IMG/VR virus record: IMGVR_UViG_3300032288_004964 | Location: 186,001-250,000 of that record | Reading direction: 5' to 3' (one strand) | DNA: 64,000 nucleotides | Part shown: piece by piece, positions 50,363-59,607 of the stretch | How the letters are laid out: the number at the start of each line of letters is the position of its first letter | Position numbering within the stretch: the stretch's first letter is position 1 | Translations under genes and position numbers: made by a program | Notes under the pieces: model-generated | Database searches by the model: none | What the model was told of the DNA's origin: nothing | Seen by the model: the letters and a program-made list of their open reading frames with translations, nothing else

Positions 50363-50450
50363 GGAGAAATGGCAGAGTGGTCGATTGCGGCAGTCTTGAA
50401 AACTGTTGAACCGTGAGGTTCCTGGGGTTCGAATCCCTATTTCTCCGCCA
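50363..50450 (+). tRNA. tRNA-Ser(UGA), canonical type II
   Basis: GGAGAAA/TTTCTCC acceptor, CT-TGA-AA loop, long variable arm, TTCGAAT T-loop, G73 and encoded CCA. Confidence 0.95.
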
Positions 50451-50474
50451 AGGTATTTTTTAAACCTAGTAAAA

Positions 50475-51776
50475 ATGAATATAGAATCTTTAGGCAGACA
50501 AGCTATAGACAGGATTAAATCTCAATGGGGTTTACCTAAAAATGGTTTTATCGCCGGTGGGTCAATCGCCAACATTGTTTGGGAATTGGTATCTGGTAAT
50601 AAAGCTATCATTAATGATATTGATGTTTTTGTTTTTGATGGTATTCAAGACGAGTTAGATAAATCTGACAAATCTTCATTATTTAACTATCAAGAAAAAG
50701 AAACCAAATATGGTGAAGATTATACTGGTATGTGTTTCAATACATATACTAAGGACTTTTATTCTATAGTTGAGTCTACTAAAGATGATATATTTAATAT
50801 TGTTAAATACAAATCAAATAGTAAAGATCCTTCTTTAATTATTAAATCATTTGATATTAACTCAACAAGAATTGGATATTCTATCGAGAAAGATGAAATA
50901 TACTGGACTCCTGATTTTGAAGAGTTCTTAAAAACAGGTGAGTTAAAAATCACAAATCTTATGACACCTTCTCATACAGCAGTAAGAATTGCTAAGAAAA
51001 GTAAAGAGTTAAAAGCTAAAATAGACATTTTTGAATTTAAACTTTTACAATATGCGCTTTGCCATGGATTTTCTGATAGAATTAAGTTTAGATTTAAGGA
51101 AAGATATCACCAGATGTATAAAGATAACTTAGATATACTTGATAGTATGTTTTGTTTATCTAGAGATACTGAGGCTGAACAATATGTTAGATCTCAATAT
51201 GGTGATATTACTGAACTTTATTACTTAAGTCCTAAAGTAGAAGATGGTAATCCAGAACTTGAAATTCCTCATTATATTAATACTAGTCCTTCTTTTGGTA
51301 AAATTTTTGGAGAATCAGATAATAATGTTAATATTATAAGTAAGTCTATAGATTTTTTATTTTATATGAGAAATATCTGGGGTAATGAAAATCTTCAAAA
51401 CATTTGGAAAAATGTTTATTACTTCTTTACTGATGTTAATTATATTGATAGAGAGATAAATAATGAGGATTTAGAATTGTTATCAAGGTTTTCACAATAT
51501 GCTCCTAAATCTATTGAGAATCTTAAAGGAATGAAAATATCTGAACAAATTGATATCATTAAAACATTTTTAGATAAATTTAAAGATGATCCTTTAGTTG
51601 CCATTTCCATAATAGAGAAGATTAAAGTAACTAAAGACTTGATATTGGATGATGAAACAACTCTTATTTTAGAATTATCTGTTAGAAAAGAAATTGTAAA
51701 TGATACAAGAAATAAGGTTAGAAGAATTTTGAATAATGAAAATGATAGAAATCAAAACTTTTTAGCAGATTTTTAA
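50475..51776 (+). CDS. Nucleotidyltransferase-superfamily protein (poly(A) polymerase/CCA-enzyme-like head)
   Basis: Likely start ATG 50475; GFIAGGS...NDIDVF and downstream FDIN motifs. Confidence 0.55.
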   Translation: MNIESLGRQAIDRIKSQWGLPKNGFIAGGSIANIVWELVSGNKAIINDIDVFVFDGIQDELDKSDKSSLFNYQEKETKYGEDYTGMCFNTYTKDFYSIVESTKDDIFNIVKYKSNSKDPSLIIKSFDINSTRIGYSIEKDEIYWTPDFEEFLKTGELKITNLMTPSHTAVRIAKKSKELKAKIDIFEFKLLQYALCHGFSDRIKFRFKERYHQMYKDNLDILDSMFCLSRDTEAEQYVRSQYGDITELYYLSPKVEDGNPELEIPHYINTSPSFGKIFGESDNNVNIISKSIDFLFYMRNIWGNENLQNIWKNVYYFFTDVNYIDREINNEDLELLSRFSQYAPKSIENLKGMKISEQIDIIKTFLDKFKDDPLVAISIIEKIKVTKDLILDDETTLILELSVRKEIVNDTRNKVRRILNNENDRNQNFLADF

Positions 51777-52127: not shown

Positions 52128-52705
52128 TGAAAGATATTAATTATCTATTTGATCTATTAAAGCAATCTAATGTATCTCTTTTAGGATATACATTTAGACA
52201 AGAAAGACTCAAAGACGAGATTATTTCAAAATTACCTCATGTTGTAATTCCGGAAATAGACTCGTCTTTTTCTTTTAAATCTTTTTTAAGAGATTTGAAA
52301 TTAAAATCAATTTTAGAAACTGGAGAGATTGTAAATAATCCAGAGTATTTTGTTTTAGATTTAAATAATATCAGATCTGTTGAGTCTGATATAATTGGTA
52401 GACAAAGACAAATAAAGAGTATTGTAAATAACATTGTGGTGAGTAGCATGTCTATGTCTCATTCTTATAAACTTTTATTACTTACTACACTATATAAAAG
52501 TGGAACTAATACAGATAATTCTGATATTACAAATTTTTCAGGAGGTAGTCAACCAATCTATATGAGTGATATTGCTATTGTAATGAAAGATAAATCTATG
52601 AAGGTAATAAAAAATAGATTTGGTAATGATGGTGATGATATATTAATATCATTTGATAAATTAAAAGAATATAATTACATTTGTAACTATGAACATAACA
52701 ACTAA
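52127..52705 (+). CDS. Hypothetical protein with a DnaB/RecA-like helicase C-terminal-like segment
   Basis: SGGSQPIYMSD...KVIKNRFG; no Walker A motif. Confidence 0.45.
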   Translation: MKDINYLFDLLKQSNVSLLGYTFRQERLKDEIISKLPHVVIPEIDSSFSFKSFLRDLKLKSILETGEIVNNPEYFVLDLNNIRSVESDIIGRQRQIKSIVNNIVVSSMSMSHSYKLLLLTTLYKSGTNTDNSDITNFSGGSQPIYMSDIAIVMKDKSMKVIKNRFGNDGDDILISFDKLKEYNYICNYEHNN

Positions 52706-53123
52706 TAGAAAAGCACATTATGAATTCTCAATACTTCAAGAGTTTGAGGCAGGTATTGTGCTTATAGGAACTGAAGTTAAATCTATTAGAAAAGGTGATG
52801 TAACTATTGGTGATTCCTTTATCTATATTAAAAATGGTGAAGTTTGGGCCAAAAATGTCAAAGTAGCTAAATACAAACAATCTTATTCTGGAGATACTCA
52901 CGATGATAACCGTGATAAAAAACTACTACTAAACAGATCTGAAATTAATAAAATAGAAAAACTTCTTCAAGATAAAGGAGTAACTATTGTTCCCTTAAGT
53001 ATTTTTACTTTAAACAATAAAATCAAAATGAAGATTGCTGTTGTAAAAGGTAAAAAGATGTATGATAAAAGGGAAACTATCAAAAAGAGAGATGTTGAAA
53101 GAGATTTAAGAAGAGTTGCTTAA
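52689..53123 (+). CDS. smpB: SsrA-binding protein SmpB
   Basis: NRKAHYEF...EAGIVLIGTEVKSIR...RDKKLLL...GKKMYDKRETIKKRDVER. Confidence 0.95.
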   Translation: MNITTNRKAHYEFSILQEFEAGIVLIGTEVKSIRKGDVTIGDSFIYIKNGEVWAKNVKVAKYKQSYSGDTHDDNRDKKLLLNRSEINKIEKLLQDKGVTIVPLSIFTLNNKIKMKIAVVKGKKMYDKRETIKKRDVERDLRRVA

Positions 53124-55571: not shown

Positions 55572-55997
55572 ATGACACTAAAAGAAAGAATAAATGCTGA
55601 CTATATTAAAGCATTTAAGGAAAAGAACAGTATTGAAAAGAATTTGCTTTCAGTAGTAAAAGCTGAAATCACTACAATTGAAAAAAATACCTCGGTTGAG
55701 AATCTTTCGGATGCTGATGTTACAAAGATTCTTAATAAAACAGCTAAATCACTGAATGAAACTATTAAATCTTTAACATCTACTGATCATAGTGAAAATT
55801 TAGTACAAGCTTGTATGGAATTGGATATCATTCAAAGTTATCTTCCAAAACAAATGTCTAAAGAAGAAGTTGATGCAAAAGTAAATGAACTTGTTACATC
55901 TGGTATTACTCAAATTGGTGCTATTATGAAAGAATTTGCAACTTTACCAGTCGACAAGAAAATGGTTTCTGAGTCAATAAAAGAAATTGTAAAATAA
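55572..55997 (+). CDS. GatB/YqeY domain protein
   Basis: MTLKERINADYIKAFKEKN...YLPKQMSKEEV...IGAIMK. Confidence 0.85.
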   Translation: MTLKERINADYIKAFKEKNSIEKNLLSVVKAEITTIEKNTSVENLSDADVTKILNKTAKSLNETIKSLTSTDHSENLVQACMELDIIQSYLPKQMSKEEVDAKVNELVTSGITQIGAIMKEFATLPVDKKMVSESIKEIVK

Positions 55998-56045: not shown

Positions 56046-56255
56046 ATGAGTCTTAGAAATAACGGAATAATTTCAGAATCTGAATACAAAGGAAAAACCA
56101 TTGAAGAAGCTAAAAGATATGCTGAAGAAGGTGGATTTGTTACTAGAGTAGTAGAAGAAAATGGAATTGCTCTTATGTTAGACATGACTGCTAAATCTAA
56201 CAGAATTAACTTTAGAGTTAGAGATGGATTTGTAACCGCAGCATTTGGCGGATAA
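56046..56255 (+). CDS. Small protein resembling I78/potato-I-type peptidase inhibitors
   Basis: RVVEENG...DMTAKSNRINFRVRDGFV...GG pattern. Confidence 0.45.
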   Translation: MSLRNNGIISESEYKGKTIEEAKRYAEEGGFVTRVVEENGIALMLDMTAKSNRINFRVRDGFVTAAFGG

Positions 56256-56275: not shown

Positions 56276-56320
56276 ATGATGTAGATTTTAACATATAACA
56301 ACTTAGAAAGACCTCCTTAA
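56276..56320 (+). promoter_or_regulatory. Leader ORF with internal amber codon: MM*ILTYNNLERPP (stop TAA)
   Basis: ATG ATG TAG ATT TTA ACA TAT AAC AAC TTA GAA AGA CCT CCT TAA after TAATATATA (56260-68); its last codons overlap the 5' arm of the terminator. Confidence 0.65.
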
Positions 56321-56407: not shown

Positions 56408-56764
56408 ATGAACAATTAGATTAATGAAACAAAATTAATAGTTATCACAAGAAGTGATATCTCAAATGGCTACCAAGTAGTACAATCAACACATTCAATA
56501 GCAGACTTTGCCTTTGAATTTCCTCAAACATTCTCCCAATGGAAAGGAGAATCAAATTCTATTATCTGCCTTTCAGTTAAAAATGAATTTGAATTACAAA
56601 AACTTTATCATAAATACAAAGACCTGACCGAAACAGTTATGTTTTTTGAACCTGATGTAGATCAGTTTACATCACTGTGTCTTTATGGTACACCAAAAAT
56701 CCGTAAAAGCCTTTCTCACTTACCCCTGGCTCTAAAAAATAAAAATCAAGAAAATGAAATTTAA
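56408..56764 (+). CDS. Peptidyl-tRNA hydrolase 2 (Pth2)-like protein with in-frame TAG at codon 4 (not in the ORF track)
   Basis: MNN*INETKLIVITRSDISNGYQVVQSTHSIADF...W..ESNSIICLSV..EFEL...FFEPD...TSLCL...LPLAL; 118 codons with no other stop. Confidence 0.7.
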
Positions 56765-57437
56765 TTTATTCAAAAAAAAGGAAAAAGTGGTAGAACCAGT
56801 TTTACCTAAACCAGTAATATACACAGTTAATAATACAAATTATACTATAGAAGATAGTTTTCCAATAAAGATACAATCACAAGCTGGTGATGTTTCTGTA
56901 TATGGTTATACATTAGAAGTTAGATGGAAAGACCAAAAAGGAGAATGGTATAGTTGGATGACTTACTGGAATCATAGAATCTATGTTAGTAGAAGTTCAG
57001 CTTTAGATGCTGCTATTAAAGTATTCCCAAGCTATAGAGATGGATATGAATGGAGAATAACTCCACTTTACAAAATGACTGAACCAGAATACAGAGATTA
57101 TAAAATTGACCAATTATTATCAGAGAAAAAAGTTAATAGAGAACCAATTGTATATGAGATTAAAGCTTGGAAAGTAAAAGATGATTGTGAAATTCATTAT
57201 GAAAAAACAAACCATACTTACAAATACTCAAAAGGAACTTTATTCATCCAAATGGAGAATGGTAATATTGTAACAATAAAGGATCCAAGGACTTTTGTTG
57301 GATATGGTAGTAGACATCATCTATTTAATGAATTGGTTAAAGATGAAAGAGTAGAAGAAGTAGACATTCAAAATGAAAAGTGGGCACATCCTCACTTATG
57401 TAAAGAATTAAAAACAAAAATAAAAAATAAAAACTAA
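56754..57437 (+). CDS. Hypothetical protein with internal RDYKIDQLL motif
   Basis: 227 aa; overlaps the end of the Pth2-like gene. Confidence 0.6.
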   Translation: MKFNLFKKKEKVVEPVLPKPVIYTVNNTNYTIEDSFPIKIQSQAGDVSVYGYTLEVRWKDQKGEWYSWMTYWNHRIYVSRSSALDAAIKVFPSYRDGYEWRITPLYKMTEPEYRDYKIDQLLSEKKVNREPIVYEIKAWKVKDDCEIHYEKTNHTYKYSKGTLFIQMENGNIVTIKDPRTFVGYGSRHHLFNELVKDERVEEVDIQNEKWAHPHLCKELKTKIKNKN

Positions 57438-57441
57438 AATT

Positions 57442-58029
57442 ATGTTGTAGATTACAAAACAAGAATTAAGTCAAAAAATGACTGAATGTTATCAGACCAA
57501 AGGTCAGTCTGTTTTAGAACACGGCATTTCAGTTAAAAATTACTTATTTGATTTAGTCAATCATTTAAGAAGTAATGATCCATTACAATATGAATGGAAT
57601 CTACCAGATTGGTTATTGCAAAATAAAGACCTTATTTTATCATCATCACCAGATGATGAAACTCTAGAACTATACACAGTCTATCATGATTGTGGTAAAC
57701 CCTTTTGTACAGAAATAGATGAAAATGGTAAGAGACATTTTCCAAATCACGCGGAAGTATCTTATAACTATTTCAACCAAGTATTTAGTAACCCAGTCGC
57801 TGCAGATTTAATACTACATGATATGGACATTCATTTATTGAAATCCGATGGTGTTGTAGAATTCTGTCAGAATCCTCAAGCTTTAACTTTATTATTAACA
57901 GGTTTAGCCGAGTTACATTCAAATGCTCAAATGTTTGGTGGTACTCAATCAACCTCTTTCAAGATTAAATGGAAGAGTATTAATCAAAGAGGTAAACAAA
58001 TTATTAATCAACTAAAAAATAAAAACTAA
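57442..58029 (+). CDS. HD-domain hydrolase; probable true start 57442 with in-frame TAG at codon 3
   Basis: EHG...YHDCGKPF...HFPNHAEVS...HDMDIH motifs; ATG TTG TAG ATT is in frame with the annotated ATG at 57478. Confidence 0.7.
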
Positions 58030-58033
58030 AATT

Positions 58034-58417
58034 ATGAAAACAACAGAACAAATCAAATCAGAAATCGTTAATTATTTAACAAAAACATCAATTCACACTT
58101 TTGCGAAACCAAAATCAACTTATAAATATGGAAAAGAAGGTTCATATTATGAGTATGACTATGAAAACTTTACTTATTTCAAAGTATTTAAAAAAGATGA
58201 AGACTTTTATGTATTAGAGAATAGCAATGGTCAAAATACACCTACAACTTATAAGTTGAGAAAAATTGATATTGATTATTATATAACTTATTATGGTAAT
58301 AATGCTAAATGTGTTATTAGTAATAATTTATTCTTAGATAAAAAAATGAAGAGCACTAAGAAGAACAAGTATGTTATGTCTGAGATTGATGAAATTACTA
58401 AAAATATTACAAAATAA
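58034..58417 (+). CDS. Hypothetical protein
   Basis: 127 aa. Confidence 0.55.
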   Translation: MKTTEQIKSEIVNYLTKTSIHTFAKPKSTYKYGKEGSYYEYDYENFTYFKVFKKDEDFYVLENSNGQNTPTTYKLRKIDIDYYITYYGNNAKCVISNNLFLDKKMKSTKKNKYVMSEIDEITKNITK

Positions 58418-59427: not shown

Positions 59428-59512
59428 GATCCTGTCGCTTAGCGGCTATAGCAACTGGCTTTTAACCAGTAGAGAGAAATCTCAACCGTGGGTTCGAGTC
59501 CCACCAGGATCA
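59428..59512 (+). tRNA. tRNA-Lys(UUU) with long variable arm
   Basis: GATCCTG/CAGGATC, ACTGG-CTTTTAA-CCAGT, 17-nt variable region A-GAGA-GAAA-TCTC-AACC. Confidence 0.88.
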
Positions 59513-59517
59513 CTAAA

Positions 59518-59598
59518 GCTTTCGTCGCTTAGTGGCTATAGCAACTGGCTCTTAACCAGTCGAGAAATCAACCGTGGGTTCGAGTCCCACCGAAAGCA
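59518..59598 (+). tRNA. tRNA-Lys(CUU) with extended variable arm
   Basis: GCTTTCG/CGAAAGC, ACTGG-CTCTTAA-CCAGT, 13-nt variable region C-GA-GAAA-TC-AACC. Confidence 0.88.
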
Positions 59599-59607
59599 CA
59601 AATATAT

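What the first reader, a model, noticed from the sequence alone, without database searches (positions are those of the whole stretch)
57422..58036. Identical 23-nt initiation regions support the TAG-interrupted start of the HD gene
AAAAAATAAAAACTAAAATTATG occurs at 57422-57444 and 58014-58036. The second copy is the start of an ordinary gene, so the first ATG (57442, followed by TTG TAG ATT) is probably a real start, 12 codons upstream of and in frame with the annotated ATG 57478. Ribosomes loading there either make a dipeptide or read through.
Basis: seen in the sequence. Interest (0 to 1): 0.65.

Follow-up and report, generated by a model that had tools for sequence, protein, structure and literature searches.

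The report
Amber codon gates phage tRNA enzymes
In this 385-kb phage and dozens of other large phages, two neighbouring genes for tRNA-end enzymes start with ATG, one or two codons and then a TAG stop that the phage's own suppressor tRNA most likely reads through, so the upstream start is real and suggests what jumbo-phage suppressor tRNAs are for.

Summary
The 23-nt repeat is real (24 nt with the preceding T), but relatives do not keep it, so it is weak evidence.

'ATG, 0-6 codons, TAG', in frame with the HD gene, occurs in cultured jumbo phages (RsoM2USA, XacN1, RAS14, pT24) and in 37 of 42 distinct IMG/VR leader contexts. TAG is the first in-frame stop upstream of the conserved Met in 50 of 69 loci, against 21% background (p 2e-19).

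The neighbouring PTH2-like gene (56408-56764) starts the same way. Its conserved core has no other start codon.

All seven complete genomes examined carry a tRNA with anticodon CUA, often 1-2 kb from these genes.

The decisive result is covariation. The three loci whose leader has TGA instead come from contigs with tRNA(UCA) and no tRNA(CUA) found.

The genome otherwise uses the standard code.

Best reading: translation starts at 57442 and the phage amber-suppressor tRNA decodes TAG, gating a PTH2-like hydrolase and an HD enzyme resembling the HD part of tRNA nucleotidyltransferase. The XacN1 paper could not find its suppressor's targets. No protein-level evidence exists, and the purpose of the gate is inferred.

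The parts
57422..57444 (+). Repeat copy 1: C-terminal codons and TAA of the 227-aa ORF, then AAATT, then ATG 57442
58014..58036 (+). Repeat copy 2: C-terminal codons and TAA of the HD gene, then AAATT, then ATG 58034 of the next ORF
57442..57450 (+). Leader ATG TTG TAG. Proposed true start of the HD gene, with an in-frame amber codon at codon 3 (57448-57450) followed by A (ATT)
57451..57477 (+). Nine codons (ITKQELSQK) between the TAG and the conserved Met. Conserved at protein level in relatives and predicted to form the N-terminal helix
57442..58029 (+). Full HD-domain gene: 195 codons with X at the TAG (P0002). The standard-code ORF begins at ATG 57478
56408..56764 (+). PTH2-like gene: ATG AAC AAT TAG(56417-56419) ATT ..., 118 codons (P0001). 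There is no ATG/GTG/TTG between the TAG and 56639, so the conserved core needs read-through
56754..57437 (+). 227-aa ORF of unknown function lying between the PTH2-like and HD genes. Seen here only in the window's nearest relatives; RsoM2USA has an unrelated gene in that position
58034..58417 (+). Ordinary 127-aa ORF that follows repeat copy 2. Conserved in L001, L004 and L005
58912..59968 (+). tRNA cluster (Phe, His, three Lys, Arg) just downstream. The tRNA(CUA) itself lies outside the window, at genome 370132-370204
52689..53123 (+). SmpB homologue (context: island of translation-rescue genes)
55572..55997 (+). YqeY-like protein (context)

Best explanation
Translation of the HD gene starts at ATG 57442. 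Codon 3, TAG (57448-57450), is decoded by the phage's own amber-suppressor tRNA (anticodon CUA, genome 370132-370204), giving a 195-residue protein whose first helix is the ITKQELSQK leader. Ribosomes that terminate at the TAG instead release only Met-Leu. The neighbouring PTH2-like gene (56408-56764, TAG at codon 4) works the same way. Together with the tRNA they form a conserved three-part module of large phages: tRNA(CUA), a PTH2-fold hydrolase and an HD enzyme whose best structural match is the A. aeolicus tRNA nucleotidyltransferase, residues 265-377 by sequence profile. Both enzymes are made only when functional suppressor tRNA is present. Shown here: the conservation, the tRNA linkage and the codon-anticodon covariation. 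Inferred: that suppression actually happens, which residue is inserted, and why the gate exists. Placing the stop at codon 2-8 makes a failed read-through nearly free, and the A at +4 favours suppression, which is established knowledge about amber context effects in E. coli. The rest of the genome uses the standard code.
For: Window: the leader is in frame. tRNA(CUA) is found by ARAGORN and by Rfam (59.5 bits). In the whole genome, only the HD and PTH2-like genes combine ATG-x-TAG-AT with a long open frame. The PTH2 core has no alternative start codon. Cultured relatives: ATG-x-TAG leaders occur in RsoM2USA, pT24, XacN1, Xoo-sp13 and RAS14, and RAS14 has no other start before the conserved N-terminus. 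GAP32-type phages carry the TAG at codon 47 instead. All 7 complete genomes examined carry tRNA(CUA). IMG/VR: 79 loci were found. Of these, 43 have a leader TAG, 8 are fusions with the TAG at the start of the PTH2 part, and 10 have a TAG in the body. The first upstream in-frame stop is TAG in 50 of 69 loci, against 21.4% background (p 1.8e-19), and ATG+TAG opens only 2.8% of other long frames. Shine-Dalgarno sites precede the leader ATG. The PTH2-like neighbour starts M-x(0-6)-TAG in 56 of 74 ORFs. tRNA(CUA) lies within 10 kb in 46 of 79 loci, always on the gene's strand, at a median of 1.2 kb against 5.1 kb for other tRNAs. It is the only tRNA present in 7 loci. Covariation: the three loci with M-x-TGA leaders come from contigs with tRNA(UCA) and no tRNA(CUA) found. 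One of these is a complete 343-kb genome in which both genes carry TGA. Context: +4 is A in 28 of 42 leader TAGs, against 42 of 182 terminator TAGs (p 1.6e-7). T is 2 of 42 against 72 of 182. The leader is part of the protein: TAG-free homologues start 12-13 codons before the conserved Met, phrog_14850 aligns from residue 5, and AlphaFold2 puts residues 3-12 in a helix at pLDDT 95-97. Also seen in the LR7565xx huge phages and in mycobacteriophage HyRo.
Against: There is no protein, ribosome-profiling or tRNA-charging data, so read-through is inferred. ATG 57478 has its own A-rich leader and the Met is nearly invariant, so a shorter product starting there is possible. That Met is equally conserved inside PTH2-HD fusions, where it cannot be the start. 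The closest complete relative, LR745206.1, keeps both TAG leaders, yet no tRNA(CUA) was found among its tRNAs or at the syntenic site. TAG still ends about 9% of long ORFs here, so an efficient suppressor would extend those proteins, and no enrichment of back-up stops after TAG was seen. The amino acid inserted is unknown; the tRNA is class I with A73 and is not clearly derived from any other tRNA in its genome. In the AlphaFold2 input, only the window sequence carried the leader.
Confidence: 0.8

Rival explanations
1. The TAG is a true stop. ATG-TTG-TAG is a two-codon upstream mini-ORF that captures ribosomes and passes them by termination-reinitiation to ATG 57478, which is the only start of the HD protein.
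For: ATG 57478 lies 27 nt after the TAG, is preceded by an A-rich stretch, and corresponds to a nearly invariant Met. Coupled restarts are common in phages (general knowledge).
Against: This does not explain why the stop is TAG in 50 of 69 loci and always in frame. It does not explain why the codons after the stop are conserved as protein. RAS14 HD and the PTH2-like genes of this window and GAP32 have no start codon before their conserved cores. GAP32-type genes carry the TAG at codon 47. The stop type switches to TGA exactly where the suppressor is tRNA(UCA).
Confidence: 0.1
2. The phage uses a TAG-reassigned genetic code (code 15) genome-wide, and these two genes are just examples of it.
For: A tRNA(CUA) is present, and TAG is the rarest terminator.
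Against: ORFs of 100 aa or more under the standard code already cover about 97% of the genome. TAG ends 40 of 443 such ORFs. Reading TAG as sense fills no more gene-less gaps than reading TGA as sense, in any of the 7 genomes. Only two genes in the genome show the leader pattern.
Confidence: 0.03
3. The upstream ATG and TAG are chance features, or a decaying 5' end. The 23-nt repeat is a coincidence of two Lys/Asn-rich C-termini in A-rich DNA.
For: The exact repeat is not conserved in relatives. Short A-rich matches are easy to get in 29% GC DNA.
Against: The leader architecture recurs in dozens of independent phages from hosts of several phyla, far above background.
Confidence: 0.03
4. The G of the TAG marks a 3' splice site or landing site, and the 227-aa ORF is an insertion (intron or bypassed segment) in an ancestral PTH2-HD fusion gene like that of pT24.
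For: pT24 encodes a contiguous PTH2-HD protein whose linker resembles the window's leader.
Against: Rfam finds no intron here or in relatives. RsoM2USA has an unrelated upstream gene but the same leader. pT24's fusion itself starts M-K-TAG. The ORF fills nearly the whole putative insert, leaving no room for a ribozyme core.
Confidence: 0.02

Closest known systems
Stop-codon recoding in phages with phage-encoded suppressor tRNAs (code 15 / code 4 phages; Borges et al. preprint 10.1101/2021.08.26.457843; PMC9523058)
   Same: In-frame TAG (or TGA) in phage genes, with a matching suppressor tRNA carried by the phage. A proposed role in timing gene expression.
   Different: There, tens to hundreds of genes are recoded, mostly late and lysis genes, and coding density collapses under the standard code. 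Here the genome is standard-code. The stop sits at codon 2-8 of just two specific translation-related genes, which lie next to the tRNA across many lineages.
prfB (RF2) autoregulation through an early in-frame UGA (established knowledge, not tested here)
   Same: An early in-frame stop codon in a translation-factor gene makes its synthesis depend on the balance between termination and an alternative decoding event.
   Different: prfB escapes by +1 frameshifting and senses its own product. Here escape would be by a dedicated suppressor tRNA, and any feedback is hypothetical.
Synthetic suppressor-tRNA feed-forward gate (PMC7969014)
   Same: Amber codons placed in a gene so that the protein appears only when a suppressor tRNA is expressed, which removes leaky expression.
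   Different: That system is engineered. This one would be a natural, widely conserved counterpart.
Lambda bar minigenes (AUG-AUA-stop) and Pth dependence (established knowledge, not tested here)
   Same: A ribosome-binding site plus a 2-3 codon ORF ending in a stop. A link to peptidyl-tRNA hydrolase biology, since short peptidyl-tRNAs drop off and need Pth.
   Different: bar minigenes stand alone. Here the mini-ORF is always in frame with a conserved coding sequence, and it heads the hydrolase gene itself.
Unexplained suppressor tRNAs of cultured jumbo phages (XacN1, PMC5852040; RsoM2USA, PMC8504454)
   Same: The same tRNA(CUA) genes.
   Different: The XacN1 authors read through 18 annotated amber stops, found nothing, and stated that they could not identify target genes. 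A 2-3 codon ORF is never annotated, so the leader TAG of ORF364 was outside their test.

Membership tests
Suppressor-tRNA-dependent read-through of an in-frame stop | In-frame stop inside sequence conserved as protein on both sides or downstream | tested here: met
Suppressor-tRNA-dependent read-through of an in-frame stop | Cognate suppressor tRNA available in the same genome | tested here: met
   tRNA(CUA) at genome 370132-370204. Present in all 7 complete genomes examined. Not found in LR745206.1.
Suppressor-tRNA-dependent read-through of an in-frame stop | Stop codon identity matches the suppressor's anticodon across lineages | tested here: met
   TAG occurs with CUA in the bulk of loci. 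The three TGA-leader loci come from contigs with tRNA(UCA) and no CUA found.
Suppressor-tRNA-dependent read-through of an in-frame stop | Protein product containing an amino acid at the stop position | not testable with these tools
   Needs proteomics or a reporter assay.
Genome-wide TAG reassignment (code 15) | Many genes interrupted by TAG; low coding density under the standard code | tested here: not met
HD-domain phosphohydrolase (PF01966) | Pfam score above the gathering threshold | tested here: not met
   20.8-20.9 bits against a cut-off of 22.
HD-domain phosphohydrolase (PF01966) | Conserved His / His-Asp / Asp metal-ligand pattern and HD fold | tested here: met
   H24, H79-D80, H100, D124 and H128 are invariant in 52 sequences. 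The model has pLDDT 97. Best PDB matches are the A. aeolicus tRNA nucleotidyltransferase chains 3WFO/3WFR (TMq 0.59-0.64, E 0.016), followed by other HD proteins. The match is weak by E-value.
Peptidyl-tRNA hydrolase PTH2 (PF01981) | Pfam score above the gathering threshold | tested here: not met
   20.3 bits against a cut-off of 23.
Peptidyl-tRNA hydrolase PTH2 (PF01981) | PTH2 fold and profile-level homology to solved Pth2 structures | tested here: met
   Profile against 2ZV3, E 5.7e-8. Foldseek matches 2ZV3, 3ERJ, 1Q7S and 1XTY at TM 0.70-0.76, E about 2e-6.
Peptidyl-tRNA hydrolase PTH2 (PF01981) | Canonical catalytic residues and hydrolase activity | not tested
   Invariant residues are Q22, H25 and E77. 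Comparison with the published catalytic Lys/Asp would rest on memory alone, so activity is unknown.
Upstream mini-ORF with termination-reinitiation | A usable start codon shortly after the mini-ORF stop | tested here: inconclusive
   Met for this window's HD gene (ATG 57478). Not met for this window's PTH2-like gene, RAS14 HD or GAP32 PTH2.

The most novel reading that the evidence does not exclude
The tRNA(CUA) is not a general decoder but a dedicated reporter tRNA in a feedback loop. The two enzymes it gates act on tRNA 3' ends (ester hydrolysis by the PTH2-like protein, phosphoester chemistry by the HD protein). Their synthesis is therefore set by the charged, intact fraction of a tRNA that no essential codon needs, in competition with RF1. 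This would be a tRNA-based homeostat for tRNA-end repair and recycling, or a sensor of host attacks on tRNA or of termination capacity, analogous in logic to prfB autoregulation.
Probability: 0.25. Interest if true: 0.9.

Novelty: new variant of a known kind. Interest (0 to 1): 0.8.

Why it matters
Cultured jumbo phages that use the standard code carry amber or opal suppressor tRNAs, and the papers read here found no targets for them (XacN1 states this outright). This result names specific, conserved targets: a PTH2-like hydrolase and an HD enzyme, each with the stop at codon 2-8. The two genes are often fused to each other and often lie next to the tRNA. The pattern is found from Bacteroidota-type phages to proteobacterial and mycobacterial phages.

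It also corrects annotations. Many of these genes are truncated, split or missing in GenBank, for example pT24 BPT24_235, RAS14 WAX21615, GAP32_397-399 and an unannotated gene in RsoM2USA.

It gives a natural example of suppressor-gated expression that can be tested in culturable phage-host pairs. It may also represent the minimal state from which wider stop-codon recoding in phages evolves.

Tried and rejected
**Group I intron or other structured RNA.** I looked around the 227-aa ORF for one; Rfam found nothing in the window or in 5 related loci.

**Frameshift in the PTH2 region.** I first read 56508-56627 plus 56639-56764 as a frameshifted gene (note 1). This was wrong: one frame, 56408-56764, with a TAG explains it.

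**tblastn test for TAG-spanning homology across the genome.** It was uninformative, because non-coding frames of conserved DNA align for all three stop codons.

**Gap-filling test.** No excess for TAG over TGA, so there is no general recoding.

**Back-up stops after terminator TAGs.** No enrichment.

**Identity of the suppressor tRNA from similarity to other tRNAs.** No clear parent. The only alignment hint is that the GAP32-type TAG aligns with Val in Arash and ME3, which is too thin to use.

**Other ATG-x-TAG-ATT sites in the genome (373360-, 199640-, 380228+).** These are non-coding-looking frames and I treat them as chance.

**tRNA(CUA) in LR745206.1.** Sought in all Rfam tRNA hits and at the syntenic site; not found.

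**Not used.** The large protein searches, the reads tools and complex prediction. The family scans and locus searches answered the question.

**Code used.** TAG was read only as X. No other genetic code was named.

Full report
**Setting.** The window is bases 186,001-250,000 of a single 385,333-bp contig with 28.7% GC. It carries 37 tRNA genes, and its relatives are jumbo phages. ORFs of at least 100 aa under the standard code already cover about 97% of the genome.

**Observation.** The 23-mer occurs exactly twice, at the stated coordinates. About 0.05 matches are expected by chance, and no shuffle out of 100 gave two. The identity is 24 nt if the preceding T is counted. Each copy is the end of the preceding ORF (both end KNKN-TAA), then AAATT, then ATG. 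The first ATG is followed by TTG TAG ATT and is in frame with ATG 57478, 12 codons downstream. The second ATG opens a conserved 127-aa ORF. Gene starts in this genome have A/T-rich, G-poor leaders with no Shine-Dalgarno sequence, and AAATTATG is enriched at starts: 17 of 424 long-ORF starts, out of 59 occurrences genome-wide. ATG 57442 therefore has an ordinary-looking initiation region. The exact repeat is absent from the three nearest relatives, so its identity is probably incidental and carries little weight.

**The leader is conserved far beyond this genome.**
- In the 634-kb phage LR745206.1, the two nearest IMG/VR relatives and Ralstonia phage RsoM2USA, the HD gene is preceded by ATG, one or two codons, TAG, and then ATT/ATC. 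This is in frame with the conserved Met.
- Between the window and RsoM2USA, the codons after the TAG differ the way coding sequence does (ITKQEL against ISKEEL, with Leu TTA against CTT).
- tblastn found the protein in 29 phage records, nearly all over 200 kb; the exception is Salmonella phage Arash at 181 kb.
- Reading the frame through TAG gave these patterns. M-x-TAG starts the gene in XacN1, Xoo-sp13 and RAS14, where HD is fused to a C-terminal PTH2 domain. It also does in pT24, where PTH2 is fused N-terminally to HD. The TAG is at codon 47 in GAP32, XbC2, Kaldavass, CBB, BF and fHe-Yen9-04. There is no TAG in the HD genes of Arash and ME3.
- XacN1 and RAS14 have a Shine-Dalgarno site before the leader ATG. 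RAS14 has no ATG, GTG or TTG between the TAG and the conserved N-terminus, so its annotators chose a GTG inside the domain.
- TAG-free homologues start 12-13 codons before the conserved Met, so the leader is part of the protein.

**Scale and statistics.**
- A profile scan of IMG/VR returned 79 loci. Of these, 43 have a leader TAG preceded by ATG, 8 are PTH2-HD fusions with the TAG at the very start, 10 have a TAG in the body, and 17 were first scored as having none.
- In 69 non-redundant loci, the first in-frame stop upstream of the conserved Met is TAG in 50. The background among other long ORFs of the same loci is 21.4% (p 1.8e-19). An ATG within seven codons before a TAG opens only 2.8% of other long frames.
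- Among 42 distinct leader contexts, 37 have the ATG 1-7 codons before the TAG, often with AAGGAG- or GGAGG-type sites in front.
- The base after the TAG is A in 28 and G in 8. At TAGs that end long ORFs in seven genomes, A is 42 of 182 and T is 72 of 182 (Fisher p 1.6e-7 for A, 2.8e-6 for T). A purine at +4 favouring amber suppression is established E. coli knowledge and was not tested here.

**The neighbouring gene does the same.**
- A genome-wide scan for ATG, 1-4 codons, TAG and then at least 100 open codons found only two sites in this genome. One is the HD gene. The other is at 56408: ATG AAC AAT TAG ATT... running to 56764.
- That frame has no start codon of any kind until 56639, so two-thirds of the protein, including its invariant residues, needs read-through.
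- It has a PTH2 fold. The Pfam score is below threshold, but a 38-sequence profile hits solved Pth2 at E 5.7e-8. A model with pLDDT 93.5 matches Pth2 structures at TM 0.70-0.76.
- The same start is seen in RsoM2USA (in an unannotated gap, with an SD site), Arash, GAP32, pT24 and ME3. It is also seen in 56 of 74 PTH2-like ORFs next to HD in IMG/VR, in the huge phages LR756500-504 and LR745206, and as ATG TAG GTG in mycobacteriophage HyRo.

**The suppressor tRNA.**
- This genome has a tRNA with anticodon CUA at 370132-370204 (Rfam 59.5 bits).
- All seven complete genomes examined have one. In pT24 it is one of only four tRNAs and lies 3 kb from the fusion gene. In Arash, GAP32 and HyRo it is within 0.3-2 kb.
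- In IMG/VR, a tRNA(CUA) lies within 10 kb of HD in 46 of 79 loci, always on the same strand. Its median distance is 1.2 kb, against 5.1 kb for 409 other tRNAs. It is the nearest tRNA in 31 of 49 loci that have any tRNA, and the only one in 7.
- These tRNAs are class I, share the loop CUCUAAA, and resemble one another more than they resemble other tRNAs of their own genomes.

**Covariation.** Three of the loci first scored as having no TAG turned out to have M-x-TGA leaders: ATG TCA TGA GTT, ATG TTG TGA GTG, and ATG ACA TGG TCG TGA GTC. Their contigs carry tRNA(UCA) opal suppressors, and no tRNA(CUA) was found among the 15, 49 and 40 tRNAs examined. One of them is a complete 342,591-bp genome with two tRNA(UCA) genes 2.8 kb upstream of HD. 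In that genome the PTH2-like gene also begins ATG GAA TCG TGA. A switch of stop codon matched by a switch of anticodon is what suppression predicts, and none of the rival explanations predicts it.

**Not a recoded genome.** TAG ends 40 of 443 long ORFs. Treating TAG as sense fills no more gene-less gaps than treating TGA as sense, in any of the seven genomes.

**What the proteins are.**
- The HD protein scores just under Pfam's HD threshold but matches phrog_14850 at 1e-63 from residue 5.
- A 52-sequence alignment keeps the His, His-Asp and Asp pattern.
- The model has pLDDT 97.1, and the leader forms helix 3-12.
- Its best solved matches, by sequence profile (E 0.0018) and by fold (TMq about 0.6, E 0.016), are chains of the A. 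aeolicus tRNA nucleotidyltransferase, residues about 265-377. These matches are weak.
- With the PTH2 fold, the repeated fusion of the two genes in both orders, and the neighbours SmpB, YqeY and tRNA genes, the pair most likely acts on tRNA acceptor ends. That is an inference.

**Mechanism and its limits.** Ribosomes most likely load at 57442. At the TAG they either terminate, releasing a dipeptide, or accept the suppressor tRNA and make the full protein. Putting the stop at codon 2-8 makes failure cheap, and the A at +4 favours suppression.

Why these two enzymes are gated is not shown. Possible reasons are a timer set by tRNA expression, protection from premature or excess tRNA-directed hydrolases, or a feedback loop that senses charged suppressor tRNA or RF1 activity.

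Caveats:
- There are no protein-level data.
- A second start at 57478 is possible.
- LR745206.1 keeps the TAGs but has no detectable tRNA(CUA).
- The inserted residue is unknown.

**Literature.** The XacN1 paper read through 18 annotated amber stops and reported that it could not identify targets of its two suppressor tRNAs. The RsoM2USA paper only notes the tRNA. A jumbo-phage review notes PTH2 but no stop codons. The phage-recoding preprint does not mention peptidyl-tRNA hydrolase. Four full-text searches found no report of this module. Papers in subscription journals were not searchable.

Noticed in passing
window 56408-56764: PTH2-like gene with TAG at codon 4. Under the standard code only a 41-aa C-terminal fragment (56639-56764) is an ORF.
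   Followed up: yes
window 52689-53123: Full-length SmpB homologue (PF01668, E 1e-51). ARAGORN found no tmRNA gene anywhere in the 385-kb genome.
   Followed up: partly
window 56277-56318: Another ATG ATG TAG ATT..., followed by only 10 sense codons before TAA, just after the 69-aa ORF 56046-56255. Probably chance, since the motif is common in this AT-rich genome.
   Followed up: partly
window 59428-59513 and 59518-59599; genome 263450, 281611, 282845: Unusually long tRNA-Lys genes (86 and 82 nt). Three tRNA-like genes that ARAGORN reads with four-base anticodons (acat, agta, attc). These may be introns or odd loops.
   Followed up: no
window 50406-51776: 456-aa ORF with a weak nucleotidyltransferase match (NTP_transf_6, below threshold), next to tRNA-Ser and upstream of SmpB. 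Possibly another tRNA-end enzyme.
   Followed up: no
L068 1561-1632 (Salmonella phage Arash); L328 2102-2175 (Mycobacterium phage HyRo): The Arash tRNA annotated as tRNA-Phe is read by ARAGORN with anticodon CTA. HyRo has an unannotated tRNA(CTA) 250 nt downstream of its peptidyl-tRNA hydrolase gene, which is itself preceded by ATG TAG.
   Followed up: partly
RAS14 genome c302428-302502: Stenotrophomonas phage RAS14 also carries a tRNA with anticodon TTA (ochre type) besides its tRNA(CTA).
   Followed up: no
L001 / LR745206.1: This 634-kb relative keeps M-N-T-TAG (HD) and M-N-N-TAG (PTH2), but none of its roughly 60 tRNAs has anticodon CTA. The site syntenic to this genome's suppressor is empty.
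   Followed up: partly
L327 (LR756500.1), just after the PTH2-like gene: The next frame again opens M-K-TAG-I-K-I-T..., so a second early-TAG gene follows directly. It was not identified.
   Followed up: no
L002, L003, L062, L064 (GenBank annotations): Read-through changes several annotations. pT24 BPT24_235 is annotated from an internal ATG that cuts the PTH2 domain. RsoM2USA's PTH2-like gene is unannotated (gap 68848-69291). GAP32_398 and GAP32_399 are two pieces of one HD gene. RAS14 WAX21615 is started at an internal GTG.
   Followed up: yes
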